From Ascidiella aspersa (lineage: Eukaryota): a DNA stretch of 64,000 nt. The stretch lies in NCBI GenBank assembly GCA_963924565.1, contig OZ004610.1:9982001-10046000 (forward strand), in the 5' to 3' direction. The translations under genes were made by a program, and so were the position numbers. Positions 15,901 to 44,600 of this stretch are shown here, in pieces. Position 1 is the stretch's first letter. Each line of letters opens with the position of its first letter. The notes under the pieces are model-generated. The model ran no database searches, was not told the DNA's origin, and worked only from the letters and a program-made list of their open reading frames with translations.

Positions 15901-18900
15901 TATTTCTTTTTTTACTTTGCGGAAACATTTATTGTGTTTCTGTGCAGCCATAACGCTGTGGGTTAATTAGCTCCCACAAGTTTATTGCCCAAATAATTGT
16001 ATGGATAAATGTGCATTTTTTTATCCAATGCGTCTCCTTCTAAATTTAAATTTAAATTTTTTTGCAGATCATGCTGCTGGTTTCATTCATTGGTGCTGGA
16101 GTGCAGTTGTTTGGAATGACGCTAGTAACAATTATTGTTGCAATGCTGGGGATGTTGTCACCATCCAGTCGTGGCTCACTTCTCACTGCTTCGTTTGTCC
16201 TTTTCATTTTAATGGGGTAAGCAATTTAGCTGTTTTTTTATTCGTTCAATGAGTCTGTTCATTAGCTTCTTTTGTTGATTTGCTTGTTGTTAAAAGTGCT
16301 TCATGTGTAAGTTGGTAAGTTTTTAACCAAAACAAGTGAAAATAAATGCCCCCTTGTTATTATGCACTTAATATAACTTTAATGTCCAGAGTGTTCGGTG
16401 GTTTCTATGCTGGGCGACTGTACAAGAGTCTGAAAGGTCAGTTGTGGAAGAGGGCTGCGCTACAAACTGGTCTACTTTATCCCGGGATTTGCGCATCTGT
16501 GTCATTCATTCTGAACTTCTTTATTTGGGGAAAGCACTCTTCAGGAGCAGTAAGTTTAGTGAAACCAATAAATAGTAAACATATTGTGTTTCAAAATCAA
16601 AAAATTGCCATTTACTTTCCATATTTAATACAATGCATCCGTCCGCCATGTTTAATGATTGCAAGACATTTTCAATGGGTTGTTATATTAATTAACGCTC
16701 TGCTTTAGGTGCCCTTCACTACAATGCTTGCAATCTTGGCCATGTGGTGCGGCATTTCTCTTCCCCTGCTTCTATTTGGCTTCTATTTCGGATATCGCAA
16801 GCAGCCTTATGAAAATCCAGTTCGCACCAATCAAATTCCCCGCCAGGTCCCAGAGCAGCAGTGGTATATGAATTCCTTTGTCAGGTATACTAAATTTTTC
16901 TTTGTTCAGCCAATTTTATTCGCATTTGTTGTTTTTTTTAGATACGATATCTTAAATTTAGCTTACTGTTTTAAATAAACTATTTTAAGATACCAACATT
17001 ATGCATTTATTACAGTTTTTATTATTTACAGTGTTTTGATGGCCGGAATTCTTCCTTTTGGAGCTGTTTTTATTGAGCTCTTCTTTATTTTCACGGTAAT
17101 AATTTTTGTGTGATACTTTTTGTAAAATATAAATATGTTTCTACTGATGCACATATAGCAGGGGTTGCCAACCTATCAGACACCAAGAGCCACATTTGTT
17201 GCTTGGTTAACCGAAAAGAGCAACACCTTACACCAGGGGTTCCCAACCTGTGGTACGTGAAGGTTTTTCAGGTGGTACGCGAGTATAGCTTTCGTTTTTT
17301 AAAAAAACCCGGACTGTCAACAAGAAGCACAGTTGCTTTAAATAGCCGTACAACGCCGTGGAACAGCAGTGGGCGTTAATTATGCCAAATTACTGCTCTT
17401 GATAGATATCATCAATTGTTTTATAGCATAATCTACAAATAGCGTTGAATAATTCAAGTTGGAGGCTAAAAAAAATAAAATTTGATTCGATGAAAATAGT
17501 TGTTCTGCAAGAAGTGGTACGCGTGGTAGTACAGAGTGTCCGATTGGTACGTTATACATATTTTTTTGCGTTGTTCTTGTTTCAAAAGTATTGCTAAAAA
17601 TAAATTGGCCTTAAGGCAAACAATCTGTGTCGGAACCGGTAATATTCCATACCAAACGAAATCGAAAATTCTAAAAAATCATTTGTGCAACATGAACGTA
17701 AGAGCCGCATATAACTGGGTAAAGAGCCGCATGCGACTCGCGAGCCGCGTGTTGGACACCCCTGACATATAGTGTTATCCAAATTTTCTTACCTTCAATT
17801 GAAATATGTATGTTTCCACAAATCTTTTTTTTGCAAATAACATCTGTTGGGGGTTTTGCTGTTAAACACCTTCAAGCAGTCGGTGCTATTGGTTAATGTT
17901 CGTACTGGATATGTGACATTTTCAATACTGGGAAAGAAACGAGTAACAATCATTCATTATATATTATGTTGCATTGCTTCCGACATACAACGCGCTCGCA
18001 TAAGACTATGCACTATTCATTTCATTTCCTATATACCTACCAGGCGTGATAAAGTAGCTGGCGACCCATATTCACCAAGCTTATCGTCCTTGGGTTTTCA
18101 CCAAACATCCAAACATGTTTTCAACAAACATTTTGTCCTTTTTTACCGCTTTTGCAAAACCTTACTGTCGACCAACACAACTTAACACACGAAATAGGTT
18201 CTTTACAGCATCGATTCTAAAACTTTTTCGGTGACTTTATGGTATTTGTGCGTTGTACCAGATCTACTTTTCTTAACTATTGCGATTAAAAAACCTTTAG
18301 TGTGTCAACAGTTGAGAGCAGGGGTCGGCAACCTTTTTCTAGTCGCGGGCCAAAACCAAACTCAGAAATGTCTCTGCGGGCCGCACAAAATGTTAACTAA
18401 GAGTTGTGTTCTTGAAACAACAAACTGTGAATAAAGCGGATAATTTTTTGCACTTAAAGACGGTTTAATTACATTTTAGGAGGCAGTAAAGTGTTGTCCG
18501 CGACGCACCTGACAGCCTTTCACGCCACAACGGCAAAGAAGCGCTGCACTTTTTTAAGGACAGCATCAAACCGTAAACGAACCGAATGTATAAGATCATT
18601 CGCGCAAAGCGCCAAAATTTTTCGCACATAATAGTTAAAATAGTCAAAAAGTGTATGTAAAATGGTCTCGTGTATAGTTTGTCAAATACTCGGCGGGCCG
18701 GATAAATTCATTGGCGGGCCGTAGGTTGCCGACCCCTGGTTAAGAGGGTACATTTATTTACAAAACTAACAAACGAAATCATCCTATCCATTTTATTAAA
18801 TGATAACGTTTAATAGAAACGCAGGAGTATAGAAAAAAAATAGAATTAAAAATAAATCATTTACTTATCATTCACCACTATTTATTCGCCAGTTTAAACG

Positions 18901-21148
18901 ACACCTCTTAACAGCATTCTGTTATTCCGCCCCTTTTTACCGCAGGCCATCTGGGAGAATCAGTTCTACTACCTCTTCGGCTTTCTTTTCCTCGTCTTTG
19001 TCATTCTGGTGATCGCCTGCAGCCAAATAGCGATCGTCATGGTTTACTTTCAACTTTGCTCAGAGGTGAGAATCCCTCTCTTCAAGGACTTTAAATGTGG
19101 CTACGCATTTCAACCAATCTCCCTTTTTTAAGATTAAAAAAAGCAATACTTAAACAAGGCAATGGTTCTCTTTAAAAAAAATTCTTGCGATGTCTTAGGA
19201 CAAGTTTGTCGGACTTGACAATTTCACTAATTTTGACTAATATCTCGCACCAAAACTAATTATTTTTTGTTTGCTCTGAAAATAATAATCAATTGCTGCA
19301 GGTTTTTTGGCAACATTAAGTTCAAATACTAAACACATGTCGGGGAATAATAATATGTGTAAACACTTTAATATTGAAGCAATTGAGTTTAGATCATAGT
19401 GCGCCCCCTTTGAAACAACCTGCCAGGGCGCCGCGGCACACAGTTTAAGAACCTTTGTATTATGGTATGTAGCTAAACCACACGTCGCTAATGGGTTTTA
19501 TATTGTCCAGGATTATCACTGGTGGTGGAGGTCCTTTATTGTGTCCGGAGGTGCGGCAGTATACGTTCTACTTTATTCCGTCTTTTACTTTCACACACAG
19601 GTAAGCTTGGTGTATCTTATTTGCTAATACAACTGCTGAACAACTAAACTGGGTATTGGGTAATGTTAATTTTTTTTTTTTTTGAGATTATTTTACAATA
19701 TTGCACTCAATCGCTTTTTGTTTGTTGAAAAAAATTGAAGGGAATAGATTTATTTATTTTAATAATCTCTGCTACATAACAGTATTTTTAATTTACCGCA
19801 ATTTGCTACCACACCTACACTAGTACTGTAACTTGTTAACACAGAAAAATAAAGTACCCCCAATTACATCTTGTGCATCAATAGTCGTTTATCTGTTCCT
19901 AGTTGTTTAACAACCACGATTTAACCGCAGATTTCACTATAACGGTGCGAACTTCTTGACTGTTCTATAACTATTTCGTAGTGAAGTGTGTATTGTGTAT
20001 TTAATTAAAATTCATTAGCTAACACTATATCAGCGCTTGAAACGACAAAGTAATTAGGGTAATTTGTTCCATTATTTCATCGCTAACGAAGAGTCGAGAG
20101 TGTTAAGCAGTGTTCCCTCTAAGAAAATTATCTACTGCGCAAGAATATTTTTGTAGTGCGCAAGATTATTTTTCTAGTGCGCAAGATTATTTTAAGGCTG
20201 CGTTGGCAGGTGTCCGCGGTAGATCGATGTTTTTGTATTGGGGCAAGGCGTGAAAATTTTAAAGATGACGTTACAAGTTAAATATGTGCAAGGATATGGC
20301 AACAAAGCGGTCACGCGAATTTTTTTTTGTTGAATATTTGGGTTAAATTGACAAAAGTCTACTTTTTTTAAATAGGATGCCTTTAGGGCACAATCAAGAT
20401 TCACGAACTATTCGCTCATTTGCCGTTGGTCCATTGAACACACAGCTGTATATGCACAGAAATCGTGTAGAAACTACAATTGTGTTAAAAATTTACTTCC
20501 TAAAAAATGCATTTCGCTTGTATGATCACGAATTATTGTCAAACACTCCACTGCTGTGTTCGGCACTCTTTGAAACTCATTTTTTCTTTAATCTTGGTTT
20601 TCCTGAGTAGACATTTAATTGTACGTGAGATAAAAAAAAAACGTACACAGTATGGATGATGAAGACCAATTGGACAAAGTAATTTATTACGTCACAATTG
20701 TCAATGCGGATTTGATTTGGTTACTTGCTTTTAGCTACAAACTTCAACGAAACATGGCTAATGCGAAAAGCTCAAACTGTTGTGGCAAAAAAACTGAAGA
20801 TATTTTAGTTCTAATTTGAGAATGATGTAAGTGCGCAAAAGCAAATTTTACTGCGCAATTTGTCTGGTGTTGCTGCGCAATTGCGCAGTTGCGCACCTTA
20901 GAGGGAACACTGGTGTTAAGTGAGGGACCGCAAAACAGCAAGGTATATCGACGTGCATTCAAACCTGTTTCGAAACTTGATTTGTTTTGTTTGTGTAGTT
21001 GAGCATTACCGCTTTCGTCCCAACCATCCTCTACTTCGGCTACACCTTCATAATCGTCTTTACGTTCTGGGTGCTGACTGGAACTATCGGCTTCTTCGCT
21101 TCCTACAGCTTTATCCGTAAGATCTACGCCCAAGTCAAGATCGACTGA
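6967..21148 (+). CDS. TM9SF4: Transmembrane 9 superfamily member 4 (nonaspanin), complete, 14 coding exons
   Basis: Exons 6967-7089, 7222-7321, 7403-7556, 7850-7984, 9877-10057, 14522-14633, 15475-15614, 16068-16216, 16390-16549, 16709-16884, 17032-17095, 18946-19065, 19511-19600, 20999-21148 splice in phase. Motifs [89 protein letters not shown] and C-terminal KIYAQVKID* match TM9SF4. Confidence 0.97.
8696..9796. mobile_element. Non-autonomous hAT-type element
   Basis: TIR CAGGGGTGTGCAACCT / AGGTTGCACGCCCCTG; 8-bp TSD CTCTAGGT / CTCTTGGT. Confidence 0.85.
10936..11537. mobile_element. Imperfect ~600-bp palindromic MITE
   Basis: AAATTAATGCAGTTCTAAGCA / TGCTTAGAACTGCACTAATTT, CAATGCACTAATT / AATTAGTGCATTG and GCTAACCAGCACCCTAAC / GTTAGGGTGCTGGTTAGC are arranged as nested inverted pairs. 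Confidence 0.75.
11729..13876. mobile_element. Foldback-type element: ~880-bp near-identical inverted arms (11729-12608, 12987-13876) around a ~378-bp spacer, in TM9SF4 intron 5
   Basis: The arms are reverse complements with only scattered mismatches; termini GGTGGCACCATATGT / ACATATGGTGCCACC. Confidence 0.9.
17159..17764. mobile_element. Non-autonomous hAT-type element with a second TIR-like start inside (~17234)
   Basis: TIR CAGGGGTTGCCAAC / GTTGGACACCCCTG; perfect TSD ACATATAG. Confidence 0.85.
18319..18738. mobile_element. hAT-type MITE
   Basis: TIR CAGGGGTCGGCAACCT / AGGTTGCCGACCCCTG; TSD GTTGAGAG / GTTAAGAG. Confidence 0.88.
20108..20912. mobile_element. hAT-type non-autonomous element with TGCGCAA subterminal repeats
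   Basis: TIR CAGTGTTCCCTCTAAG / CTTAGAGGGAACACTG; perfect TSD GTGTTAAG; partial related copy from ~36306. Confidence 0.9.
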
Positions 21149-29600: not shown

Positions 29601-32600
29601 ATATGAAGTGGTGACGACCATGGACTAGATGATCTCCTGATTATTCCTAATTCCATCATTTTCCGAAATTCGTCCTTTGCTATTTGCAACTTTTCCGGAG
29701 ATAACCGTCTTGCTCTTGCGTGCACTGGCGGGCCTGTTGTTGGAATGAAGTGTTCCACTTGGTGCTTTGGAGCCACGCTGAATAGTGTTGGCGTTGTGAT
29801 GTTTGGAAACTTTTCCAAAAGCTTTCTGTACACGTTGTTGCCCGAAACCAGCGTGTTTAACTGCGGCGCGCTTTGCTTTGCGTTGCTGATTGGAATGCTG
29901 GCAAATGATTTAGCATTCAGCAGGCAATTGTGCCGGAGGTCTACTAAGAGAGAATGCGCTCTCAAGAAATCTGCGCCTAAAAGAGGCTTTGCTACAGCGG
30001 CTACAGTAAAGCGCCAGCAAAATTTACCAGATGCCAGATCTAAACATATGTTTCTCGTTCCATATGTATTTATGTTACTTCCGTTGGCTGCGATAAGTTT
30101 GGGGCCGCTGGATTGCTTCCGTTTTTGAAGAGATGAGGCAGGGTAAACGCTGATTTCCGCTCCTGTGTCGATCAAAAAGTTTCTTGCGGATATTTTGTCC
30201 CATACGTAAAACAAATTCCCTCTTTTGCCGACCGCTGAAGCATTTAGTAGCGGCCGGCTGTGTCGTTTCCCTGAAACGAACAAGGTTGCTGACATTTCCT
30301 CGCTTTGTCTTTAAACCTTTCGTGGAAGAAACACAAACCAACGGATTCGTTCCTTTGTATTTTTGTCTTCTTCTTGATTTTTGCGATAGTAAACTGCTGA
30401 TCATCATTTCGCGCTTGCCACAACATGTCAGCACGTTGAGCCAGAAAGCGAGGATCTTCGAAACTTTCTTTTACCAAAACAACACGAATGTCTTCTGGCA
30501 TAGTTTGCAGAAAGAGGTATCGGAAAAGAAAGCATGGCACATGTCCAGCCATAAGCGAGAGCATTTCGTCCATCAGCTGCGACGGCTTGCGATCTCCAAG
30601 CTCAGTTATGTGCAAAAGCTTTGCTGCTCGTTCATACTCGGAGAGGCTGAATGTGCTCAGTAATCGCTCCTTTATTGCGTTGTACTTGTTCCTTTCTGGT
30701 GGATCTTCCAATAAATCGATCAGTCTACTTGCGGTATGCTGGTCCAAGGCAGATATGACGTGGAAGTACTTAGTTTCATCGCACGTAATTTTTCTTAAGT
30801 GAAATTGCGCTTCAGACTGTTGAAACCATACTCGAGGTTGCTCGACCCAAAACGTCGGAAGCTTCAGAGAAACGGCGCTTTGCATGCTTGAATCTTGATT
30901 TTCAACCATTAAACTCGTCTATAGCCAAGAAATTTCGTTTCTTGGACCGGGGTCACCAAATGTAGTGGCAAGCTTGTATTCGGTCAGCGTGTTCTGATGA
31001 ATGTAAGTAGTTGCCACGTGCGCGACACGCAAACACAAAACACACGAAAAAGGCAAATGCGAACACGTACATAAAAAGGCATAAGACACGCTTCGCTTAA
31101 CATGCTGCAGGGGCTACAATATATTTTTTTAAATATTTTTGCGAGTTTTCTTGCTTGTCAATTTTCACGTCCTGTGTTTGCGATTTGCAGACTTAAATGA
31201 GTGCATAGAAATGGACTCCTGTCCTACTAACTTTGAGTGCGTAAACAACGAAGGAAGTTATGTTTGCCAGTGCTTCGAAGGATTTGAACTGAATGTAGTT
31301 ACAGACGAATGTGAAGGTAGCATTTCTTTTTATTTTTGTCTTTAAATGGTTTACTAACAATATATTATTTCTAAATGAAGTGCAAATGTTTTGGCATTGT
31401 GAATCGTAAAATAACGTCTCAACAGCTGTTGCATATATAGTTTACTGTTAATATCAGCGATATATAGTGTTACAATACTTTGAACTTAACCATACTATAG
31501 CCAGCCGACGAAAAAATATATGTCGTTAAGAAAAGCAAATATAAATACATTTTACATAATTTTAAAATACTTTTGATTTATAACCTATTTTTTCCCTTTT
31601 TAGCAACGGATTACTGCGCGATTTTGGGATTGATGCAAAACACGCTTACGCCGTTGTTTCAAAACCTGAATAATGGCCTGGTTTCCGAGGACGTTTTGAC
31701 GGTAAGCTATTTCAAATTGGTAAAATGATGATCAACATATGAACAAACAATAAGTTGGCAGCATCTAAAAAATGAGATACATTTTTTATAATGACTATTT
31801 TGATGGTTAGAGCGAAGTTTTCACATGTGACATTGCACCAAGTATTATTTTGAAATAATTTCACCAAAAAAAAAAAAATTGGTCAGTTGTATGGCCTTTT
31901 TCGCGACCTTTGGATGTTTTGTCGATTTGCGCAACTCGTAGGCGGAGACCTTGACATTACGTCATGGATGGTCGGACAAATCGAACCTGTGAAAATCATT
32001 TTTGCGCAGGCGAAGATTGACGAGTTTAAAACTTGGGTTACACCGATGAACGTGGTCTCCGACTCCAGCAACTCGCTGTTGTCGCTTTACCCTTCGGTCA
32101 ACTCGACTATCATCACTGATTTGGTGGACTACCTTGCTTGCGATTTCTCGGCGACATGCGTAGATAGCCTTTGCACTTGCAAGTCAGGCTTCGACGGAGA
32201 TGGCTACGATTGCTACGGTGAGGTTTTCCGCAGACAGATTACGATTTTGTGACCCAGTAGTGCAGTGGTTCTTTCACCTTTTTATGGCTTACCCTCAGAT
32301 ATATGAAATAAAAGATTTTTCTGTAGGTAAATCACTAGAATGTCACTATAAACGGAACTGGAACAACACACATCAACTCTTCATCACGTAGGAAGTTATA
32401 AATGGATTTATTCCACTCTAATCTTACACTAAAAGAGTTAAGCAAAAATCAGATTCTTAAAGATTCTCAAATATGGTCTTATGGCGAATGCAATTTTAAT
32501 AAAACTAAACCAGTGTAGGTTATTTTTAAGAAAATGCCTTTAAAAGTGTGATGAACAATGAAGGTTGCCCGCATATCATGCAGCATTGCCTTGATGAAAC

Positions 32601-35600
32601 ACAACCTGCCATTAACGAGTATAAATTAATACAGCATTTTTTTATTTTGCTTATTCCACGCCATAAAGATGTTGACGAGTGCAGTTTGGGGACGCATAGT
32701 TGCGCCGACAACGCGAACTGTTTGAACAATATTGGGTCATTTCACTGCTATTGTAAAAAGGGCTACTTCGGGACCGGACAAGTGGGATATTGCAACGGTA
32801 AGTGCATTTGTTTTCCATCATTTCAACCCTTGCCTGCCAGATTCAAGTTGAAAATACTTGCCCGTTTAGGCACGCATTTCAGGAGTTGCTTATAACAAAA
32901 AGTTAATAGAATTGCTTGATTTTCTATTGAATCAGGTGCGGTTACAGGATTTTTTTTGGATGTGGCCACTTCATAATTCTGGTTAAAGTTTAAGGTTCCA
33001 AAGGTGATTTTTTTATACAAAAGCTACATTTTCAAGCAATGAGAAAAAATTCTTTTAATCGCTTCACGAGTCAAATTTTGAATTTTGGAGGGTGCGAGAG
33101 GTCGCAGGACGCCTTTGGGCTAAAACTATAACAAAAAAACAAAAAAGGTTATATATACATATTAGAAACACAATTCACACTAGCGGGGATCGCAAATTTT
33201 TGTTCTACTTATGTATACGGTAGTTAAAATGGGCAAAATAATCCAGTTTTTTATTTTTTATTATTTTTAAAGGGATGGGGAGAATGGCCACGTATCCCCT
33301 GGACCGGCCCTTGATAGCTATATAGTCTGGGCAGTATTTATATTTATGTACCGCATATCATATGCTAGAATAATGGCGGGCGGGGTATAGGCCTATTTAT
33401 TTCATATCACAAAAAATACTGACTCTGATTACTTGCCAAAACAGTTAAATTTTTTTTTTATTTGTTTCTATTAAAAGTTCACAAGCGTCCTTTTTTTGCA
33501 ATATATATATATTTGTATTATAAAAAAGCAATTGAACAGCTTCTCAAATAACCACAACCTGTTAATCATGTCATTTTAATTGGCTTTATGTTTGCCAGAT
33601 GTGGACGAGATGTTCGTCGTTAAGTTTGCGCAGGCTAATGTTATATTCAATGCCCAGCTGCCCTACTTCATCAATCTTGCAATCAACGACTCCCGACCTG
33701 CAGGTAAAAAGTTCAAAACTTCACCTTTTTAACCAAACATATTGGTCAAACAAAAATGAACAGTATTTGTTGATAGCCGCTGTCTAAACCTGGAAAGCAG
33801 GCGGTACTTTTTAACGATAAATTGTATAGCAAAGTTGATAATTTTCCTAAATTTTAGCTTCACTTTGTTTCTGTGGTGACTACCAATAAACTTTAGAACG
33901 CAATACACGGGCTTTCTCAGTCCTTTTTGTCATTTTAATATTGACAAATTTTCGCACAACCAAAAGGTAATACAATTAGTCTGTGAAAAGTGCAATCTTA
34001 TTTCCAGTTTTAAAATTACTGTAGTCCAATCTCCTGCAGGTCGACAAAGATTTATACTTGTTTGAAATCAAATGCTTTGCACTAATACCCAACGGCGTGA
34101 TGATATAAATTTTATAATCCTAAACCAGTGGCTCTTGAACTTTTTTTACCGCGGACCCCTAATTTTTTTTCGCATGGCGTGGACCAGGAAAGGCAAGAAA
34201 TCTTTAGAGGTGACGTCATGCATTGACGTCACAATACAAAAAGACTTCATAAGTCTTCTGTTTTCGGTCCAAAGAACGTGAAAGTAAAATGGGCTTGAAA
34301 TGCACAAAAGTTTTATTTGCATTTAAACTCATTTCGTTGAAAAATTGATTGCTTTTTAAACTTACACCTATATTTAAATTCGGCCCTCATGGACCCCCTA
34401 AAACTAGCTTTGTACCCCAAGGGGTCCAATCCAAATTTAAGAAGCCTCGATCTAAACGTCAGCAATTTTTCCTCGTATATTATGCTCTATAGGATGCCCG
34501 ACTGAACTAAAGAGCTTTTTGTTGGCATAGTGATACAAAAGCGGCTGGTTGCTTTGTGTGTTAACTTATTTAAAAACAGTTGTATGTAATTTATAATAAA
34601 ACAGAAAACTAAGTAAAAAAATCAACTTTTTGGGCGTTCATTGACGAACTATTAGGCTACTTTTCCGTCAGCAATGTTGCCACACGTCCGTCCATGTTAT
34701 TCGTTATATTACAGTTAGCTGAAAGAGCCACTAAGAATAATAAAATTAATGACTTTCTATGCAAGTGGACAGTTAAAGCTCAGTACAAGTAACCCCGAAT
34801 CCCCAGCTGTACTTTAATTCTCCCGGCTAAATCGTCGCTTTCTGAAATGTGTTTTATCTCGCCTCTTTGGTTCTTTATCATGAAAAAAAAATCATGAAAA
34901 GTTAACTTGTCTGAATGTCTGGCCTTTGTGCGCACAGGCGTTTGCGCCGGCGGTCTCCAAGCTAGCGACTGCGGCAGCTCGTGTCCGGCCACGTGCGACA
35001 ATCCCTCCCCGATGTGCATGGCCGTGTGCGTGCCAGATTCCTGCGACTGTCCTTCAGGCACCGTTAAAACCCACGCCTATTCGACGATATGCGTCGCTCA
35101 GGTTGGTTAGATGAAAGCGGTCTGGTCCATTCGCCGGTTGACCGCCGTGAAATGCCTGCTACGATAGGATGTCCGATATTATTAGATCGGAGCCGATACC
35201 CGATGCCAGGTGTTAGCATCGCCACTTGTCCGATACCGGTACTAAGGTGGTGTCAGTGGCTATCTGATACCAAATCATTATAGTAATTTCAGTATGATTT
35301 GCGATCCATAGTCGCGTTTTAGAAAAGTTGGGTAACTTATCAAAAAATAGTAGGTTTACCACAACTGTAGGTAATTGAACTTCGTTACACTAAAGCATAT
35401 TTGGGCTTTATAATCTGGACAAAATTTATTTGAAACGTTACTCGTTTGCCATAATTATGGCGTCATTTAGTATCGGGTCGAATCGCGATACTGGTTGTTG
35501 AAAATATCTGGCATCTCTATCGGAAAGAAAAGTTAAGTATCGGATATCCCTATATATAGTATTTCTAATTAAGGTAATAGATTAGGAGTTGACATTGCAA

Positions 35601-38600
35601 TGTGAACGTCATTTCAAAATCACATATACCTATAGTCCTATACTGACCCAAATATTTATTAACAAAACATGCAAAATAGACAATGAGGCATTTTTTCATT
35701 TCAATTTTGTTTTTTATAACTTACTGATTGTGATGTATAAATACGGAAAATTTCAGGAATTATGTGCTGACGTCGACAATTCGGTCGTCAATCCAACTGC
35801 GGATTTGCAATTCAATGGTAAATTAAATCAGTTTGAATTATAGGCCTACTTGGTTAATTAACATAAATATAAAACTGTTTTTTTTTTCAAATATGTATAT
35901 CTTTATTTTTAACATTGTTTACAATCTGTACCTAGCGTCAAGTGTAATCTGTAGCTAACTTAGAAACTCAAACAATAGGTTGCATTAAAACTTTAAAATG
36001 TTAGCCATTATACGATAGTATATACTTGTATCAATAGGCGAACCATTTTTATTTTTAGATGTTTCGCTAAAATCTTGGTTAAACTGTATTGTTTCGGATT
36101 TACCATTACGGGACGAATGGAATTATACTTTCATGTATCCGGATTTCGTGGCTGAATTATTTGTGTGAGTATTCATTTTGTTTCCACTCACTTAATGTTT
36201 TTTTTTTCCAAAACCAATTAGTGAAAAAAGTGTTGCAAAATAGGTAAGGGTTGTAGGCCTTGGTGGGAATATAACCTTCCGTGACACAGGCGCAAGACCA
36301 CTGACCGGTGTTCCCTCTAAGGTGCGCAACTGCACAATTGCAACTAAAATATCTTCACTTAATACATGTTTCGTATTTTTTTGTCTATCTAATCGTTTTT
36401 CACCATCCATGTTGTGTTTTTTTTTTATCTTACGTAGAATGAAATGTCTACCCAGGAAAAACAAGCTAACAGGGAAAAAAGGATTTTAGAAGAGCGCTGA
36501 ACACAGCAGTGGAGTGTTTAACTCTAATTCGGGATCATGAAACCGGAATGCGTTTGCATGTATAGCTGCGGGGACAATGGCTCTTACAAAATTATATTTA
36601 TATAAATATATATGTATATAGCTGCGGACCCCCGGTTGAGAACTATGATTATAAACATTATGTAGTTAATTACAGTAGAACATAGTCTCAAACTCAAAGC
36701 TCTCTGAGGGACAATTGGAAACATGTGGATTGGCCCATTGGCCGCAATCACTCGATCAGGGCGGTGCAATATTGTCATAACCTTGAGCTATTTCGGTATA
36801 TCTTTCGCGGTAAAAGGCCAGTAAACAGGACTTTGGAGCAGGCGTAAACGTTATAAAGCCACGGCTCCAGCTCCGGAGCTCTTTTTTATCATAGGTTAGC
36901 TCCAGCTCCTGAGCTTATTGATTCATCTGCTCCGGCTCTATTACGTCAAAACTAAGGTTTTAAGATAACCGCTTAATTTGCAATATCTAGCGTTTTAAAA
37001 TAATCACAAACAAAACACCACAATAAAAAAAACGAAGAAAACACCACAATGGTTAGTTAGAAAAGGTGGCGCCGAAGAAGCAACAATTGTGAAGGGTTGC
37101 TGTTAAATTACGTGAATTCAGCCATTAGTAGTAGCACAACATCTTATAAAATTTATGGGAGCCGGAGTTATTTTTAAACAACTGCTCCAGCTCCAATTGA
37201 ATTTCACTCCGGCTCTACAACGAAATAGAACAATATATAATAGATTTATAGGTCAATAAACGAGAAAACACAGTAAATAAAACACCTCGATAAGACGTTC
37301 AAATTAAACACAGATGCATTCTCATTGTTCTATAGGAAAACTGAAAAAGGTGGCACTAAGAATTGCCGCTTATTTGAAACCCCTGTACTACAAATAATGG
37401 TAAATGCCTGAGGCCCTTTAAATGCTCTGTTAATTGTTTACTGTGGTAGGGTCATAAGTATTTTGAGCCACCAAGCGAATTAAATTTAGAACACGACTGA
37501 ATATTATTTCCGACAGGCCGTGAAATACGATATGTTGACATTTTCGATAATTTTGGCAAAAAAAAATTCTATTTATAACTTTAAAATGTGATGTTTTTCT
37601 GCAAACCAAGATAAACCGTAATTTTAATTTGTCGTAAAATTTGACCTATTTTTCAGGGCACAAGCATATGAATGCATTGAATTTCCCAATCCGGTGGACA
37701 ACACCGTTAGATTTCATTTCGTCACTTTAAAATCGATCATTGACGCTTTCGTCCAAACAATTGAAAACGGCGATTACACCACTGAAGATTTGGATACTGA
37801 GGTAAATCAGTGTTTTTGCCTTTTCGTATTGTCTACGTGTTTGTTATATAATCAGGAGAAAATATATCTATAGCATGTTTGATGTAAAAAGCTTAATCTG
37901 TATCTGTAGATGTAGATGTGCATCTATAGGTATGTGTATGTTGTAAATGTGTATTTCGGGCCACATGGATTCGTTCGCTAATTTACCGAATCAAATATTT
38001 TTCTTAGCTTACTTCTGTCGTAACACCTGCATGCGTCGATGATGAGTTCGGAGGTAGGTGATTTCTTAAACTTTAAATTGTTTAAACCAAATAGAAAGGG
38101 ACAATATAAAATGTTTCACTTACAGATTAATTTCCCCCTTTTTTATATTAAAATAGTTGCCCCTGTGATAGTATTAAACCTTTTTTTTTGGAAGACTTCT
38201 TCTGTCCTGATACATCATCAAGCATCGCACAAGTTCTTGACGAATTTTTGCCTTGTGTTTCGTACCGCCTAAAAAACTCTCCATTAACGGTAAGTGAAAG
38301 AGTATTTTTTTTACATTCTATTTAGATAAGTGTTGCCCACCATTTTAATAGATTTTTATAACATGAGATATTAAATATGTCATACTAAAAATGTTAATGG
38401 ATTTAATACAACGTTGTGTATACCTTCTCAATTGACTAATACACTCTGTATTAGAATTACCAAACACTTCACTATATAAAGCAAACAAAGCATATAGGCC
38501 TACAACAGGTTCACCTTTTTATGCTTATGAGAGACTCTTTTTAAGCTCCCACTATACTAATTGTTAAGTGCTAATCTGTTCTGCAGATTCTAACAACAAA

Positions 38601-41600
38601 TTATAACGCAAACAAGTTAAATAATCTAAAACAGCAATCGTTCGCATAACAAACAATTTGTGATTACAGGTTACCGACAATTTTGCAGGAATTTTTATTT
38701 TAGCTAAGATGTCGAAACATTAATGACGATCACGTATGTGAAAAATGAGTCTGATTCATATTTCGGAAAATACGTATAATACTATTAATTAAATATTTGG
38801 AAGACTTTTCATAAAGTATTAGAAGAAAAATAAATTATTTTCGAAACAGAAAACCTAACTTGTGTTTATTGAATCGTGATGAATTAAGGAATTTCGTGAT
38901 GAATTAAGGAATTCATTTTTTGGCACTGGTCTATAGCAGTGGTCGGCAACCGCCGGTCCGCGAGGAGTTTGTTACCGGTCCGTAGCAGGGTTACCAGACT
39001 AAAATTTTCTTTAAACACGAACTGTACGTAAAAACCTGGTAAAAACTCAAAAGCAATTGAGTGTATTTTTATATTTAAAACACATTCACTTTCGTTTTAA
39101 TATAATCCATGGTTGATTGATGTGATAAAAAATTATAATTAGTATCAAGCTCTTGTGAGGTTCAAAAAAACTATAGTGTGCTGTAGCAAAATGAGTTATA
39201 TAGCACGTTCACGACATCCAAAGATGCATATTTTTATTACAAAATCGAACTTCTAGTACTTACAATATATCGAAAAATGGGCTAAAATATCATGTTTTTT
39301 ATGTTTAAGTGTGCTCACCTTGAAGTGCAATGGAATATCATGCAAACAATGTTTATAACCTATGTCCCATAATGAAATAATTTATTATTTTGATATTTAA
39401 GCAGGGAAGGTTTCGAAAAAAAACAATAAATATTAATTAGTTTTATTAATGTGTCAAACAAAAGCAATCTGGCCATCTTGTACGTATGTCTATCCTATAC
39501 TTTTAAGGTTTCGGTCTGTGGCTCGTTCTTTTTATTATTGCCTTAATTTTTCTTTCGTTTTCATATTACGTAGACTAACTATTAAAAGTGTCATGTAGGG
39601 CCTGGTCTAAAATGGGATCTGAAATACATCATTATAGGTTATACAAAGTGTGACTTCTTTTGAAAGAATGCTTTAAATGTCCTTATTTTGACAAGCTGGT
39701 AGGAGTATAGGAATAGGTAATAATGGTATACAAGTGTAATTTAAGTAAAAAAAGGCCTAAACGTTTTATTGAAATGAGCCGCTGGCTGGGTTAAATTGTA
39801 TGGTGGGCCAGATATAGCCCAAGGGTTTTAATACAGTGTTTCAATAGTTCCTAGATAGGAGCATCTCTTTGCGGCAAAACAAGAAAAAGTTGTAATAAAT
39901 TTACTTTACTGAACATTATGTTGTTTTTTAAGGCCGGTCCGTGACAAAACTTCAGTTTTAAACCGGTCCGCAGTGCAAAAAACGTTGCCGACCCCTGGTC
40001 TATAGTAGACTAAGGCTACTACCAAATTTTAGTCCGGGCGTTTATCTTGCTAACAATATTTTCATGTTAGTGTTTGGGTGGGTCAATTATTATTATTATT
40101 ATAATGTATTATTATATTTACTCTCCTATATCTATTTATTTATTGCAATTTCAATTTGACAACTTGTTTCGTTACTGTAAAATAAAGTGGTAGGATTCTA
40201 TACCAGCGCCCATTTTTGTAATTTTAAAACAACCAACAACTATAATATACCTAATTTTTCAGCTTTTTACCGACTTGGAAAGTGTTGTTGGGTTTCTCAG
40301 CCAAGACGTTTTCGTTGCATGCATTAAAGAAGCGGGTCTGCAAAACCACATGTCTTACATGTTCCTTTCGGTTTTGCAAGTGTTTGAAAGCGCCATTGTA
40401 AATATGACAATGCCGGTAGTAGAGCAGTTTCCAGGTCAGTGCCATACAAAACAAAGCTACAAAATATTTTCAATTTAACCAATTAAATCTAAGTTTTATT
40501 GCATAAACAGCATAAGTTAAAGTCAGGGCTTCGGAGTTGGTTAAAAAAAACGAGCCCGACTACGGCCAAAAAATGAACCCGATGCCGACTCCTGAGTCAT
40601 GCTTCAGCTTTAAAGCCTGTATTGCACCCTTTACGTACAGCTCAATTTAGGTGGATATTTAGAAACTCATATAGGGTGTTATATAATACATTTACCCACA
40701 ATACATGGCTAGGTTTCTACAATATGCTATTTCACCTTACAATTTACAGTTGGCAGCCTTATGAGTTCAGAAATTTGGTAGTAAACATACACACGTCGGA
40801 CTCGGGACTAGTGTACATTCTTACTCCAGCCCCGAGTTTAACTTTCAGCAAAAAACGACTCCATCGAGACCCGATTTCCGACTCCGCACAACATTGGAAT
40901 TTTTTTGAGGCAATCACGCTGCCCACTTTTAATATTATGACTTCATTCTGAAAGATTGTAGGGTTTATAGGTACCGGTACCGAGGCCGAAATTAAGTGAC
41001 TGAGGCAAACTGGCAACATTCTAAATAACACAAACACAATACTAACGTAACAACGATGTAATAGTAAGCAACAAGTTAAATCAGTTGTATATTTCTTGTT
41101 TTTAAGAGTTCGAGTCGTTGGTCTACCCTCCTCCATTATCCCTCACGCTGCTCACACGCATAACACCACAAAGTAAGCAACTTTTGGCCAGAACCTATTT
41201 CATTTTCTGTTCTTTGTCTTCTTTTTCAGCTTTTTTTAAACCCAGGATATTGAACACTTTGTTGGCTCACAGGTGCTGCTCACTTCGGTGATTTCATAGA
41301 CTACGACGCCATTCATTATGCGATACAAGATTACAACTATTACAATCCCATCTCGCGTAAGTCTGTGTTGATAAACAATGTTATTTGTACAATCAACGTA
41401 CCGGTAACACATTTTTAACTTGTCCAGAGATTTACCAAAGCGACGTTGAAGTTGTCGATGATTTGATGGCGATTCTGGAAGATATGACGTTGTTCGGTGA
41501 TTATATATCATTATTAATAAAAAAGTATTTGGGCGACAATAGCTTCTCTTGTGACAAAGCGAGATTGTTAGATCGCCATATTTCGAGGCAGAGTTACCGA

Positions 41601-44600
41601 AAGAAAACGATCGACAAAAGAGTACACCTTTGTTTATTAGTGAACCTCTTGATCCCGTCGGGCTATTAGTTTCATAACCGTTGCAATTTATCTATTGGCA
41701 TGTTTAGATTGATGGCCGCTCTATATTTCAGTGCTGAAAGCGACAGAAAGCGCTACCGTCAATATATTCTCGTTGAAGGCAACCAACCAAGCCCCATAGA
41801 TCGGTGTAAACGGCTTCTTTAACACTAAATTGCAAAGTTGTAATAATTTAAAAAAGTAACTCATCCATAAGTTGGGTAAAAAAGTAACAGCCACATTGCA
41901 TAGAAATATGCTTACACTTTTTAAACCAAACTATATCCTTTAAGTTAAAGGGTTACTTACTTTTGAAGTAGAAATGCATTTTAGTCTCCGAACTGCCATT
42001 TAACTTTCGTTAAATGAATAGGAAGTAAGTATACGTAAGATGTTTTTTTTGCATCGCGTTCCTGTTGCAGTTGCATCTGTTTGCTAAACACGAAAGAATT
42101 TGAATTTAAATCACTGCACGTTTCATGCAGACATAATCAAAGGCGATCCATACAACGCCACCTCGCCGTTCAGCGAGATTGCACCCTACCTTCATTCTAA
42201 AACCTACTTTGTTTCTTTCTTCGCTTGCCATCCTCTTGCCACCGGCGAGAACCACTTTGGTGGTTACGAATGCGTTTGCCAGGAAGGATACCACGGCGAC
42301 GGACGAGGCAACGACGGTTGCACTGGTACAATTGCTAAAAAGCATTGTTTTTTATACTTTGTTGAGGTATTTTGATGTAAGGTTTTTTTCGTTTGCAAAT
42401 TACATCCGTATGGAAACCGAAAATTTGGCAAATTTCCTAAGTTGGTATTTTTATTATTCATCAATAGCAATTTGTGTAATCGCCGTAGTTTATAATGTCA
42501 ATTGTTATAAAGAACGACACTACCGGTGTAATATCAAAACTACGACAAAACTCCAAAAGTATCATTGCATACTTATCTTATACTTACCGTTTATAACCAT
42601 TTACCAGACGACGATGAGTGCTACGATTACCCTTGCGTCGCCGCCAATTCGGAGTGCGTTAACACTGAAGGAAGCTACACTTGCGTATGTAGTGCGGGCT
42701 ACTCCGGTGATGGTGAAACCTGCGTAGGTTCGTAACATTATTTCAATCTACAAACTATATAAAAGCGCAATACGTGAAAAGACTCCAATTCAACTTTGAC
42801 CAAAAGCCTAAAAATATTTGTTTTTAATTTGCAAAAAGTCGAAGATCGATTGTGATGGCGAATTAATGTTTTTCAGATGTGGATGAATGTTTAAATGCAG
42901 CCGACAACAAATGCGACGTCAATGCCACTTGCTCTAACACTGACGGGTGGTACTCATGCACGTGTCCCTTCGAAATGGAAGGGAACGGCTTCTATTGTTT
43001 CAGTACGAAATCGCAGCATACTTTTTTTACCTTTCACACACTTTAGTTGTTTTGTCCAAGTTGTCAAACTGTGGGCACTTTCGAGCAAACAACATTGTAA
43101 CACCAAAACACATAAACGCTTTGTTTAAAAAATAAGTTGTTTTTGGTTATTGTTTCAGTACGAATTCGCAGCATACTTTTTTTACCTTTCACACACTTTA
43201 GTTGTTTTGTCCAATTTGACAAACTGTGGGCACTTTCGAGCAACATTGTAACACCAAAACACATAAACGCTTTGTTTAAAAAATAAATTGTTTTTGGTTA
43301 AAATAAGTGTAGCAAGTAGCAACCTTGTTGCCTTTCAATGGTCAAAAGGTAATGCTGATTTTAATTCAAATTTAAATATACTTTTTTAGGGTGCACGCAA
43401 TACCTTTCTCAAACGAGTATTGATTGCAACCTGTTTTACAATAACTATACCAAATAAACACCCAGTTTACAGTTTATTTGTGAAATGTTCATGATGATGT
43501 GTATCTCACCAGTGGCGCCATACGGCTGTGCTGTTGAATTCGAAAGCTATGAAGGGGATACCTACAGCATTGACCCTTGTACCATTGACGATGCTTCCCT
43601 ATCTTGTCTACTGCAAACAAACTTCAGTTTCACACTGGAGCATGTTTTTAATGTCTATAGGTGAGTTTCACTCAGTTAGATACAAAATAAGTCCGCAAAG
43701 CGCTAGCGTGAAATTTTATGTATTTAGTAGGAGTCCGCTTTGCGCAGGACGCTATTTCTTTAGATCAGGGGTCGGGAACCTTTTTTGTACTGCGAACCGG
43801 TTTAAAACTAAAATTTTGTCGCGGATCGGCTTTAAAAAACAACAAATGTTCAGAAAAGGAAAATAATTACAACTTTCAATACGAACTTTGTGCTTGTTTT
43901 GCCGCAAAGAGATTCTCCCATCTAGGAATTATAGAACCGGTAACCAACTCCTCGCGGACCGGTCCGCGGACCGGCGTTTGCCAACCACTGCTTTAGATAA
44001 TATCATAAAACCACAAAAATGAATATTTGACTCGCCTAAAGGTGCCTGGATTTGTAAAGATTAACGAACTACAAAAAAAGTTGTTTTGAGATTTTAATGT
44101 TTATTTTATTTGTATTGTTTATCATTTTGTTAATGAACTACTTTAGCGATAGGTATAGTTTTGTAAAACGATTTTATCGAAGAAGTATGAAGTTAAATGT
44201 ATCGGATTGTGCTGCACATTAAAATGCGTAACTATTTCTGGAGATGTTCGCAATGTTTCAATTTTTATCGTGTTACAAGAAAATATAAGCGTTTTTTTAC
44301 AAACTTTATATTCTTCTTTGTAAATATAACGCCTTGTTCGTTCCTGCTGTATTCATTATAAAGTTCGTTGCTATTTCTCGTTGATAGGCATAGACGCAAT
44401 GCTGTTAACATTTCGAACGTGCAGGTATTTTTTCGAACCCCCGGTCGAGCTCCAGGACCCGTACTGCGATCCCTTTACAGTTACGTCGTCATTCCAATCA
44501 ACGGAACCCCAGTCGGATGAATTGGCGTTAGACCCTTTTGCCGAAGTCATAGACGCGCCGCCAATCGACGTCCAGGATATTTTGGCGGACGAACTTAATA

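What the first reader, a model, noticed from the sequence alone, without database searches (positions are those of the whole stretch)
33599..42325. A calcium-binding EGF module split by a ~375-aa insertion, with paired loss of the C1-C3 disulfide
Seen: exon 33599 starts like a cbEGF (phase 1, DVDE) but has Met where C1 belongs. About 375 aa follow (a TIL domain plus unrecognised segments) before the EGF resumes as [35 protein letters not shown], where the usual ATC (C3) is ATG. Knowledge: EGF disulfides are C1-C3, C2-C4 and C5-C6. Inference: exactly the two partners of one bond were lost together, which suggests a folded, discontinuous EGF domain acting as a stalk for a large inserted module rather than random decay.
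Basis: partly seen in the sequence, partly recalled or inferred. Interest (0 to 1): 0.75.

Follow-up and report, generated by a model that had tools for sequence, protein, structure and literature searches.

The report
Calcium-binding EGF module interrupted by insert
In a sea-squirt-type matrix-protein gene, one small calcium-binding EGF module appears to have been cut in two by about 375-400 residues of other protein, but whether the two leftovers still fold together could not be tested here.

Summary
The sequence observation holds. A + strand gene has 11-12 phase-compatible exons at 33599-42325. The first follows a normal cbEGF exon and reads C-N-D-V-D-E-M. The last ends in an EGF remnant with C2, C4, C5 and C6, the calcium-ligand Asn and the aromatic, and Gly in the C3 column. 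It joins the next cbEGF as C-T-D-D-D-E-C. Between them lie a TIL domain (Pfam 5.7e-8) and about 290 unassigned residues with six cysteines. The insert is 396 residues, or 374 without one doubtful 66-nt exon.

Codon usage favours the assigned frame in 10 of 12 exons. No orthologue or paralogue was found, and the joined model was neither searched nor folded.

A cbEGF interrupted between its DVDE motif and C2 is well supported as history. Paired loss of C1 and C3 does not discriminate, because any secreted protein that lost C1 would be expected to purge C3.

I lean slightly towards a relic stub plus an autonomous two-disulfide remnant (0.40) over a re-docked split domain (0.35). Laminin L4/LF insertions into LE arrays are the nearest precedent.

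The parts
32669..32797 (+). E0, a canonical cbEGF exon (129 nt, phase 1-1) just upstream. Its last base G completes the Asp codon of DVDE.
   Evidence: Six Cys, VDEC start; aligned.
33599..33703 (+). E1 (105 nt, phase 1-1): (D)VDE, then Met at the C1 position, then a 30-residue hydrophobic tail with no Cys.
   Evidence: Codon score 8.7 bits; 0 of 1000 intron pieces reach it. The tail shows no EGF likeness. Single copy in the genome.
34938..35101 (+). E2: TIL domain, 9 of its 10 Cys.
   Evidence: Pfam PF01826, E 5.7e-8, profile positions 1-51 of 55. Codon score 13.5.
35757..35817 (+). E3: the end of TIL (a Cys at the spacing expected for the tenth) and the start of the unassigned part. E2 plus E3 make 225 nt, a phase 1-1 unit.
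   Evidence: That the Cys belongs to TIL is read from the sequence and from the recalled TIL pattern.
36059..36164 (+). E4 (106 nt), needed to keep the frame; 1 Cys and an N-Y-T sequon.
   Evidence: Its coding signal is weak: the assigned frame is not the best of three, and 16.9% of intron pieces score as high.
37657..37801 (+). E5 (145 nt), unassigned part, 1 Cys.
   Evidence: 10.4 bits. Single copy. No Pfam hit; PDB matches only at E 0.91 or worse.
38008..38053 (+). E6 (46 nt), 1 Cys.
   Evidence: 8.3 bits. Too short for a Pfam scan.
38195..38289 (+). E7 (95 nt), 2 Cys.
   Evidence: assigned frame best of three, but the score is weak. No Pfam hit.
40263..40434 (+). E8 (172 nt), the longest unassigned exon; 1 Cys and an N-M-T sequon.
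   Evidence: 6.8 bits. Single copy. No real hit among 1.84 billion representative proteins. Atlas hits all below 0.9. PDB matches only at E 0.085 or worse.
41107..41172 (+). E9 (66 nt, phase 1-1), a doubtful exon. Skipping it keeps the frame.
   Evidence: Good splice sites, but its codon score is -5.2 bits, the assigned frame is not the best of three, and 44.9% of intron pieces score as high.
41273..41356 (+). E10 (84 nt, phase 1-1).
   Evidence: 2.4 bits, assigned frame best of three.
41428..41496 (+). E11 (69 nt, phase 1-1).
   Evidence: 9.8 bits.
42131..42325 (+). E12 (195 nt, phase 1-1): 31 non-EGF residues with an N-A-T sequon, then the EGF remnant with C2, Gly at C3, N40, Y45, C4, C5 and C6.
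   Evidence: In the AlphaFold model the 10-residue blocks from residue 31 have mean pLDDT 82-88, and those for residues 1-30 have 45-49. The top Foldseek hits are EGF domains.
42608..42727 (+). E13, the next canonical cbEGF exon. With the last G of E12 the junction reads C-T-D-D-D-E-C.

Best explanation
One cbEGF of a tandem array in a secreted tunicate-type EGF-repeat protein was interrupted between its calcium motif (DVDE) and its second cysteine. The interrupting module is a TIL domain plus an unassigned segment of about 290 residues with six cysteines.

The rearrangement probably removed C1 itself, since the Met codon differs from Cys codons at all three positions. C3 was then purged as a free thiol.

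What is left works as follows (all inferred). The C2-C6 remnant folds on its own as a two-disulfide EGF-like unit (C2-C4, C5-C6) and carries on the canonical calcium-linked array into the next two cbEGFs. The TIL-plus-unknown module sits in line between the upstream array (ending in E0 and the DVDE stub) and this remnant. The DVDE stub is a relic that no longer forms one stable domain with the remnant.

Shown: the exon anatomy, the motifs, the TIL assignment and the cysteine pattern. Inferred: splicing, disulfide pairing, and the independence of the remnant.
For: Anatomy:
- Exon chain and phases.
- Complementary leftovers. Pfam matches E12 only from C2 on. The E1 tail has no EGF likeness: 883 of 1000 shuffles score at least as high against a Cys-masked HMM of the gene's own cbEGFs.
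- Canonical C6-x-D-x-D-E spacing at both outer junctions.
- An even cysteine count, 10 + 6 + 4.

Independence of the remnant:
- E12 alone is modelled as an EGF hairpin with block-mean pLDDT 82-88 from residue 31.
- The nearest solved folds are EGF domains of uromodulin, NELL, nidogen and Notch, with rmsd about 1.2 A over 26-33 columns, probability up to 0.99 and E of 0.16 or worse.
- The tethering C1-C3 bond is absent.
- Partial EGF-like domains are annotated in other proteins (PMC2998001, passages).
- Recalled, not checked here: human EGF has a stable folding intermediate that has the C2-C4 and C5-C6 bonds but lacks C1-C3.
Against: - DVDE is fully intact, and the calcium-ligand Asn and the aromatic of the remnant are kept. 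Yet no donor paralogue of E1, E5 or E8 exists in the 308.6-Mb genome at E <= 10. If the event is old, a relic motif should have decayed.
- The model of E12 used only 7 aligned rows, and its first 30 residues are of low confidence, so it cannot show autonomy.
Confidence: 0.4

Rival explanations
1. The two leftovers still make one discontinuous cbEGF. The DVDE strand, held one residue after E0's last cysteine, docks back on the C2-C6 half through a shared calcium ion. The cbEGF rod E0-split-E13-E14 then stays continuous, and the TIL-plus-unknown module hangs off its side from the C1-C2 loop.
For: - The halves are exactly complementary.
- Canonical linker spacing is kept on both sides.
- All recalled calcium-ligand positions are kept (D, D, E, N40, Y45).
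- No donor paralogue exists, which hints that the event is old and DVDE is therefore under selection.
- The E1 tail has 14 of 31 strongly hydrophobic residues, and the E12 head is also hydrophobic. Neither looks like a linker, so they could be neighbouring elements of one inserted fold (my own count from the translations; the rest is inference).
- Precedent from PMC6744579 (passages): laminin L4b is inserted into LE14 with the disulfide pattern kept. The beta2 LF domain is inserted where LE5 lacks its 7-8 bond, and the LE rod stays continuous.
Against: - The C1-C3 bond that would tie the strand to the hairpin is missing.
- The N-terminal 'half' is only 4-5 residues.
- The insert holds at least two domains, and nothing shows that its ends meet.
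- No test of packing was possible.
- Paired Cys loss is equally expected without docking.
Confidence: 0.35
2. There were two separate cbEGF exons, not one split exon. E1 is a whole cbEGF exon that lost all six cysteines and kept only DVDE. E12 is another cbEGF exon that lost its DxDEC start and gained about 66 nt through an upstream shift of its acceptor. On this view the complementarity is coincidence.
For: - E1 (105 nt) and E12 (195 nt) are both phase 1-1 exons, like every cbEGF exon here (120-129 nt). Simple exon shuffling into phase-1 introns therefore fits.
- By eye, hydrophobic residues in E1 fall at the C1-C5 spacings, with an Asn and an aromatic in register (my own reading).
Against: - The E1 tail scores no better than shuffles against the gene's cbEGF profile: 883 of 1000 shuffles reach the observed score with the Cys-masked HMM, and 763 of 1000 for the tail alone.
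- Pfam finds nothing in E1 at E <= 10.
- About 45% of the tail is hydrophobic, so 5 of 5 hydrophobic positions under flexible spacing is not significant.
- Two independent decays ending exactly at the C1/C2 boundary would be a coincidence.
Confidence: 0.12
3. The gene model is wrong where it matters. Either E1 is not joined to E2, or the region belongs to two transcripts, or exons are missing, so no protein carries both leftovers.
For: Three of the 12 exons have weak or no coding signal: E4, E7 and E9.
Against: - 12 of 12 junctions are phase-compatible with AG/GT borders.
- The assigned frame is best in 10 of 12 exons.
- The TIL exon starts in phase 1 without a start codon or signal peptide, so it needs an upstream phase-1 exon such as E1.
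- The cysteine count is even.
- Only 2 short intron segments look coding.
- An earlier agent's note says RNA reads confirm the 3' end of this gene. This is a lead that I did not check.
Confidence: 0.1

Closest known systems
Laminin L4 and LF domains inserted into the array of laminin-type EGF (LE) domains
   Same: A globular module is placed within or between small disulfide-rich EGF-type modules of a rod. In the beta2 chain the neighbouring LE5 lacks one disulfide (7-8) at the insertion, and the rod stays continuous with the module on its side (PMC6744579, passages; PMC5338690, listing and start of abstract only).
   Different: LE domains have eight cysteines and bind no calcium. L4b sits in LE14 with the full disulfide pattern kept. 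L4 and LF are single beta-sandwich domains. Here the host is a cbEGF, the C1-C3 bond is absent, the insert is TIL plus an unassigned part, and no structure exists.
Modified first cbEGF of the short fibulins (fibulin-3, -4, -5)
   Same: It is a calcium-binding EGF that carries an insertion inside the domain (PMC2778585, passages).
   Different: The fibulin insertion is described as a proline-rich sequence, not a set of folded domains. I recall it as tens of residues long. I did not check its position in the domain or whether the cysteines are kept.
Partial EGF-like domains in mosaic proteins (for example the tick Bm86/ATAQ family)
   Same: These are EGF-like units with fewer than six cysteines, encoded by single exons and annotated as partial (PMC2998001, passages).
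   Different: No complementary N-terminal stub hundreds of residues upstream is described in the passages I read.
Nested domain insertions such as integrin beta PSI/hybrid/beta-I and split PH domains (recalled; no call)
   Same: Both leftovers of a small domain flank a large insert and fold together.
   Different: As I recall it, the integrin case keeps a long-range disulfide across the insert. Here the matching bond is lost, and one leftover is only 4-5 residues.

Membership tests
Calcium-binding EGF (Pfam EGF_CA PF07645 / EGF_3 PF12947) | Score at or above Pfam's gathering cut-off | tested here: not met
   For E12, EGF_3 scores 27.4 bits against 28.5 and EGF_CA scores 20.7 against 27. Matches run only from profile position 8 or 12 onward. 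E1 has no hit at E <= 10.
Calcium-binding EGF (Pfam EGF_CA PF07645 / EGF_3 PF12947) | Six cysteines paired C1-C3, C2-C4 and C5-C6 (PMC7545174, passages) | tested here: not met
   Four of six are present. Met is at the C1 position in E1 and Gly is in the C3 column of E12. C2, C4, C5 and C6 are invariant with the six other cbEGF exons. The pairing itself was not tested.
Calcium-binding EGF (Pfam EGF_CA PF07645 / EGF_3 PF12947) | N-terminal D/N-x-D/N-E/Q motif plus an Asn and an aromatic in the C3-C4 hairpin (consensus recalled) | tested here: met
   DVDE is at the start of E1; N40 and Y45 are in E12. They lie 396 residues apart, or 374 without E9. Calcium binding was not tested.
Calcium-binding EGF (Pfam EGF_CA PF07645 / EGF_3 PF12947) | EGF fold | tested here: inconclusive
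   In the AlphaFold model of E12 alone, the 10-residue blocks from residue 31 have mean pLDDT 82-88, with strands at 36-41 and 44-49. The top Foldseek PDB hits are EGF domains, with probability up to 0.99 but E of 0.16 or worse. The alignment had 7 rows.
TIL, trypsin-inhibitor-like cysteine-rich domain (PF01826) | Pfam gathering score and the ten-cysteine pattern | tested here: met
   E2 scores 33.2 bits against 24.5, E 5.7e-8, profile positions 1-51 of 55. Nine Cys are in E2 and a tenth is at the expected spacing in E3 (the ten-Cys pattern is recalled).
Discontinuous (nested) EGF-type domain, as with laminin L4 in LE14 | Both parts of the host domain flank the insert in one polypeptide | tested here: inconclusive
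   This holds at the genome level with compatible phases.
Discontinuous (nested) EGF-type domain, as with laminin L4 in LE14 | The host's disulfide pattern is kept across the insert (PMC6744579) | tested here: not met
   The only bond that would span the insert, C1-C3, has neither cysteine. The laminin LF case also lacks a bond, so this feature is not universal.
Discontinuous (nested) EGF-type domain, as with laminin L4 in LE14 | The two parts pack into one fold | not testable with these tools
This needs a model of the spliced segment.

The most novel reading that the evidence does not exclude
A calcium-binding EGF domain is rebuilt from two pieces 374-396 residues apart without any covalent tie. 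A four-residue DVDE strap, held next to the preceding cbEGF, and a two-disulfide C2-C6 half share one calcium ion. A rigid cbEGF rod would then carry a TIL-plus-novel-fold module on its side, and the attachment could open and close with calcium.
Probability: 0.3. Interest if true: 0.6.

Novelty: new variant of a known kind. Interest (0 to 1): 0.35.

Why it matters
Suppose the two leftovers still fold together. This would then be the first cbEGF that I know of to host folded domains inside its C1-C2 loop. That statement rests on my searches, of which one search was swamped by unrelated 'split EGFP' papers, so it is weak. It would extend the laminin principle of a continuous rod with a side module to calcium-stiffened cbEGF arrays, such as those of fibrillin and Notch. 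It would also suggest an attachment held only by calcium.

Suppose instead that they do not fold together. The locus is then a clean example of how mosaic matrix proteins are remodelled by a breakpoint inside a module exon, followed by purging of the orphaned cysteine. It would also show that a two-disulfide EGF remnant can stay in service.

Either way, the roughly 290-residue six-cysteine segment matches nothing in any library searched, exon by exon.

Tried and rejected
RNA support. The look-up of sequencing runs gave one RNA run of the same species label (X3) and two runs whose kind the tool lists as '?' (not on record as RNA), kept as contigs. I therefore have no junction reads.

Homologues, searched exon by exon:
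- E8 against 1.84 billion representative proteins gave 1 hit at E 9.6e-4. It is an internally repetitive 285-aa protein matched in 5 stretches, which I judge spurious.
- E12 with the search for homologous proteins found no candidate. This search only sees proteins of 35-112 aa.
- E8 in metagenome contigs gave 0 relatives among 242 pattern matches.
- E12 in metagenome contigs gave 1 locus (L002), which matches only EGF residues 37-58. I did not use it.
- The Atlas search with E8 gave a best score of 0.89, below the 0.9 lead level.
- PDB sequence searches with E8 and E5 gave best E-values of 0.085 and 0.91.
- Pfam on 10 of the 12 exons gave only TIL and the EGF families. E3 (20 aa) and E6 (15 aa) were not scanned.
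- The own genome holds E1, E5 and E8 once each.

My own lead that E1 is a wholly decayed cbEGF was rejected as unsupported.

My lead that the neighbouring 'second split EGF' (31604-31701 plus 31887-32217) is a paralogous unit, which would have given a C1/C3 covariation test, was also rejected:
- Exon A against E1 gave no BLASTP alignment, and 194 of 2000 shuffles reach the observed score.
- The parts upstream of C2 are not similar: 1417 of 2000 shuffles reach the score.
- Only the EGF halves align: E 8e-5, and 2 of 2000 shuffles reach the score.

Literature:
- One search was swamped by 'split EGFP' papers.
- (PMC8667168) gave nothing usable.
- Supplements were not consulted.

Orthologue comparison was not possible, because no collection of eukaryotic genomes other than the window's own is on hand.

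Two scripts stopped with errors caused by an hmmsearch option clash. One search diagnosed it and one search is the corrected run.

Full report
WHAT IS THERE

The window is AT-rich animal DNA (GC 0.29-0.44). Earlier notes of this scan call the genome tunicate-type (unchecked). On the + strand a large gene for an EGF-repeat protein runs from about 23.6 kb to about 45.9 kb.

The gene has six ordinary calcium-binding EGF exons of 120-129 nt, all in phase 1-1 (I corrected the end of E14 by eye to 43002). Between the fourth (E0, 32669-32797) and the fifth (E13, 42608-42727) lie the exons of the finding.

THE OBSERVATION

I located 12 exons with AG/GT borders whose phases fit one after another:
- E1 33599-33703
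- E2 34938-35101
- E3 35757-35817
- E4 36059-36164
- E5 37657-37801
- E6 38008-38053
- E7 38195-38289
- E8 40263-40434
- E9 41107-41172
- E10 41273-41356
- E11 41428-41496
- E12 42131-42325

Together they are 1308 nt, or 436 codons.

With the last G of E0, E1 reads C-N-D-V-D-E-M. That is the canonical spacing of one residue between the last cysteine of one cbEGF and the D-x-D-E of the next, but with Met in the place of C1.

E2 is a TIL domain (PF01826, E 5.7e-8, above Pfam's cut-off). Its tenth cysteine falls at the start of E3.

Aligned with the six cbEGF exons of the gene, C2, N40, G43, C4, C5 and C6 are invariant. The C3 column is Cys in 6 of 6 other exons and Gly in E12. Pfam's EGF models match E12 only from the position of C2 onward and stay just under their cut-offs. 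With the last G of E12, the junction to E13 reads C-T-D-D-D-E-C, again canonical.

Two corrections apply:
- The insert between DVDEM and FAC is 396 residues in my model, or 374 without E9.
- The Met codon differs from both Cys codons at all three positions. Met is therefore 'where C1 belongs' only by position.

IS THE GENE MODEL REAL?

I could not get RNA evidence. I left that place out of everything afterwards.

As a substitute I made a codon-usage test. Coding codon frequencies came from 10 Pfam-delimited pieces of the neighbouring TM9SF gene (EMP70 matched in 10 of 10 pieces) and from the six cbEGF exons outside the finding. Background frequencies came from the finding's own introns. Stop codons were ignored. 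Results:
- The assigned frame scores best of the three in 10 of 12 exons, against 4 expected by chance.
- For 7 of 12 exons, at most 1 in 1000 intron pieces of the same length scores as high.
- E4 and E7 are weak.
- E9 looks non-coding (score -5.2 bits; 44.9% of intron pieces score as high).

A scan of the introns found only two short stop-free segments of 6 bits or more. The cysteine count of the whole segment is even: 10 for TIL, 6 for the unassigned part and 4 for the EGF remnant. An earlier agent's note says that RNA reads confirm the 3' end of the same gene. I did not check that.

WHAT THE INSERT IS

Apart from TIL, nothing was recognised.
- Pfam on 10 of 12 exons gave no other family at E <= 10.
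- The longest unassigned exon, E8, found one spurious repeat protein among 1.84 billion representatives, nothing in metagenome contigs, Atlas scores below 0.9 and PDB matches at E 0.085 or worse.
- E5 did no better.
- E1, E5 and E8 each occur once in the 308.6-Mb genome at E <= 10, so there is no paralogue and no visible donor gene.

These are single-exon searches of 34-64 residues and are blind to relatives below roughly 35-40% identity.

ONE SPLIT MODULE OR TWO DECAYED ONES?

I tested whether E1 might be a whole cbEGF exon that lost all its cysteines. Against a profile of the gene's own cbEGF exons with the Cys columns masked, the real E1 scores no better than shuffles of its tail: 883 of 1000 shuffles reach its score, and 763 of 1000 for the tail alone. 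EGF likeness in E1 therefore stops after DVDE, and in E12 it starts at C2. The two leftovers are complementary, and the outer junctions on both sides are canonical. That pattern is what a breakpoint inside one cbEGF would leave. I hold that history to be the best-supported part, at about 0.75 when the two versions below are taken together.

DO THE LEFTOVERS STILL FOLD TOGETHER?

If C1 went with the rearrangement, or the strand no longer belongs to the domain, an orphaned C3 would be purged in any secreted protein.

For re-docking:
- DVDE, N40 and Y45, the recalled calcium-ligand positions, are all kept.
- There is no donor paralogue, which hints at an old event over which a neutral four-residue motif would decay.
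- The E1 tail (14 of 31 strongly hydrophobic residues, my own count) and the E12 head do not look like linkers and could be neighbouring elements of one inserted fold.
- In laminin, L4b is inserted into LE14, and LF sits where LE5 lacks a disulfide. In both cases the LE rod stays continuous (PMC6744579, passages).

Against re-docking:
- The one bond that would tie the strand to the hairpin is gone.
- The N-terminal piece is 4-5 residues.
- The insert holds at least two domains.

An AlphaFold model of E12 alone, with the six cbEGF exons as its alignment, gives block-mean pLDDT 82-88 from residue 31 and 45-49 for residues 1-30. Its nearest solved folds are EGF domains, at E 0.16 or worse. This shows only that the remnant is modelled as an EGF hairpin, not how its N-terminal face is covered.

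My estimates are 0.40 for relic stub plus autonomous two-disulfide remnant, 0.35 for a re-docked discontinuous cbEGF, 0.12 for two independently decayed exons and 0.10 for a faulty gene model.

THE NEIGHBOURING 'SECOND SPLIT EGF'

My model is exon A at 31604-31701 and exon B at 31887-32217. It has a Cys after D-Y, 112 residues containing one further Cys, and then five cysteines in a tenascin-like spacing. That makes seven in all.

Had it been a paralogue of the present unit, it would have served as a covariation test, because there a Cys in the first exon and the Cys at C3 are both kept. But only the EGF halves are similar: E 8e-5, and 2 of 2000 shuffles reach the score. The first exons are not similar (no BLASTP alignment; 194 of 2000 shuffles). 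Nor are the parts upstream of C2 (1417 of 2000). It is an analogy within one protein, not evidence.

COMPARISON WITH WHAT IS KNOWN

- cbEGF domains have three bonds, C1-C3, C2-C4 and C5-C6. Calcium stiffens tandem arrays into rods (PMC7545174, passages).
- Laminin L4 and LF are modules inserted into EGF-type modules.
- The first cbEGF of fibulins 3-5 carries a proline-rich insertion (PMC2778585, passages).
- Partial EGF-like domains are annotated in tick Bm86/ATAQ proteins (PMC2998001, passages).
- I found no paper describing a cbEGF that hosts folded domains. One search was swamped by 'split EGFP' papers, so this is a weak negative.
- Recalled, from no call: the nested integrin beta PSI/hybrid/beta-I domains, split PH domains, the two-disulfide folding intermediate of human EGF, the cbEGF calcium consensus and the ten-cysteine TIL pattern.

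VERDICT

The interrupted-cbEGF history is well supported. The discontinuous-fold reading is plausible but untested. This is a new variant of a known kind (module insertion in EGF-type arrays) in a lineage-restricted matrix protein, with an unassigned six-cysteine segment. Interest is 0.35, rising to about 0.6 if the calcium-held split domain is shown.

Noticed in passing
window 41107-41172: A 66-nt phase 1-1 candidate exon (E9) has good splice sites but non-coding codon usage. It may be a cassette exon or not an exon at all. Including or skipping it changes the insert from 396 to 374 residues.
   Followed up: partly
window 31604-31701 and 31887-32217: This is the neighbouring 'second split EGF'. 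In the only phase-compatible model I found, the two exons hold seven cysteines: one after D-Y, one in the 112-residue insert, and five in a C-x5-C-x4-C-x-C-x10-C run. That is an odd number. The two might form an inter-domain bond.
   Followed up: partly
window 42993-43145 and 43148-43296: A direct duplication of about 150 nt (145 of 149 aligned bases identical) begins in the last 10 bases of cbEGF exon E14. It therefore copies the donor site, giving two candidate donors. Tandem Repeats Finder reported nothing here.
   Followed up: partly
window 38931-38950 and 39984-40005: A 20-nt inverted pair (19 of 20 complementary) brackets about 1.07 kb in the E7-E8 intron. It may be the ends of a small DNA transposon. 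The repeat finder did not list it.
   Followed up: partly
window about 7400-19600, + strand: Upstream neighbour gene of the TM9SF/EMP70 family. All 10 open-frame pieces tested match PF02990, in order along the profile from position 25 to 514 of 517.
   Followed up: partly
window 36546-36587: A 14-codon stop-free segment in the E4-E5 intron reads like a scrap of EGF (four Cys, one of them in a C-x-C; 9.1 bits). It lies next to a locally repeated motif. It may be noise from my Cys-rich training set or a decayed fragment.
   Followed up: no
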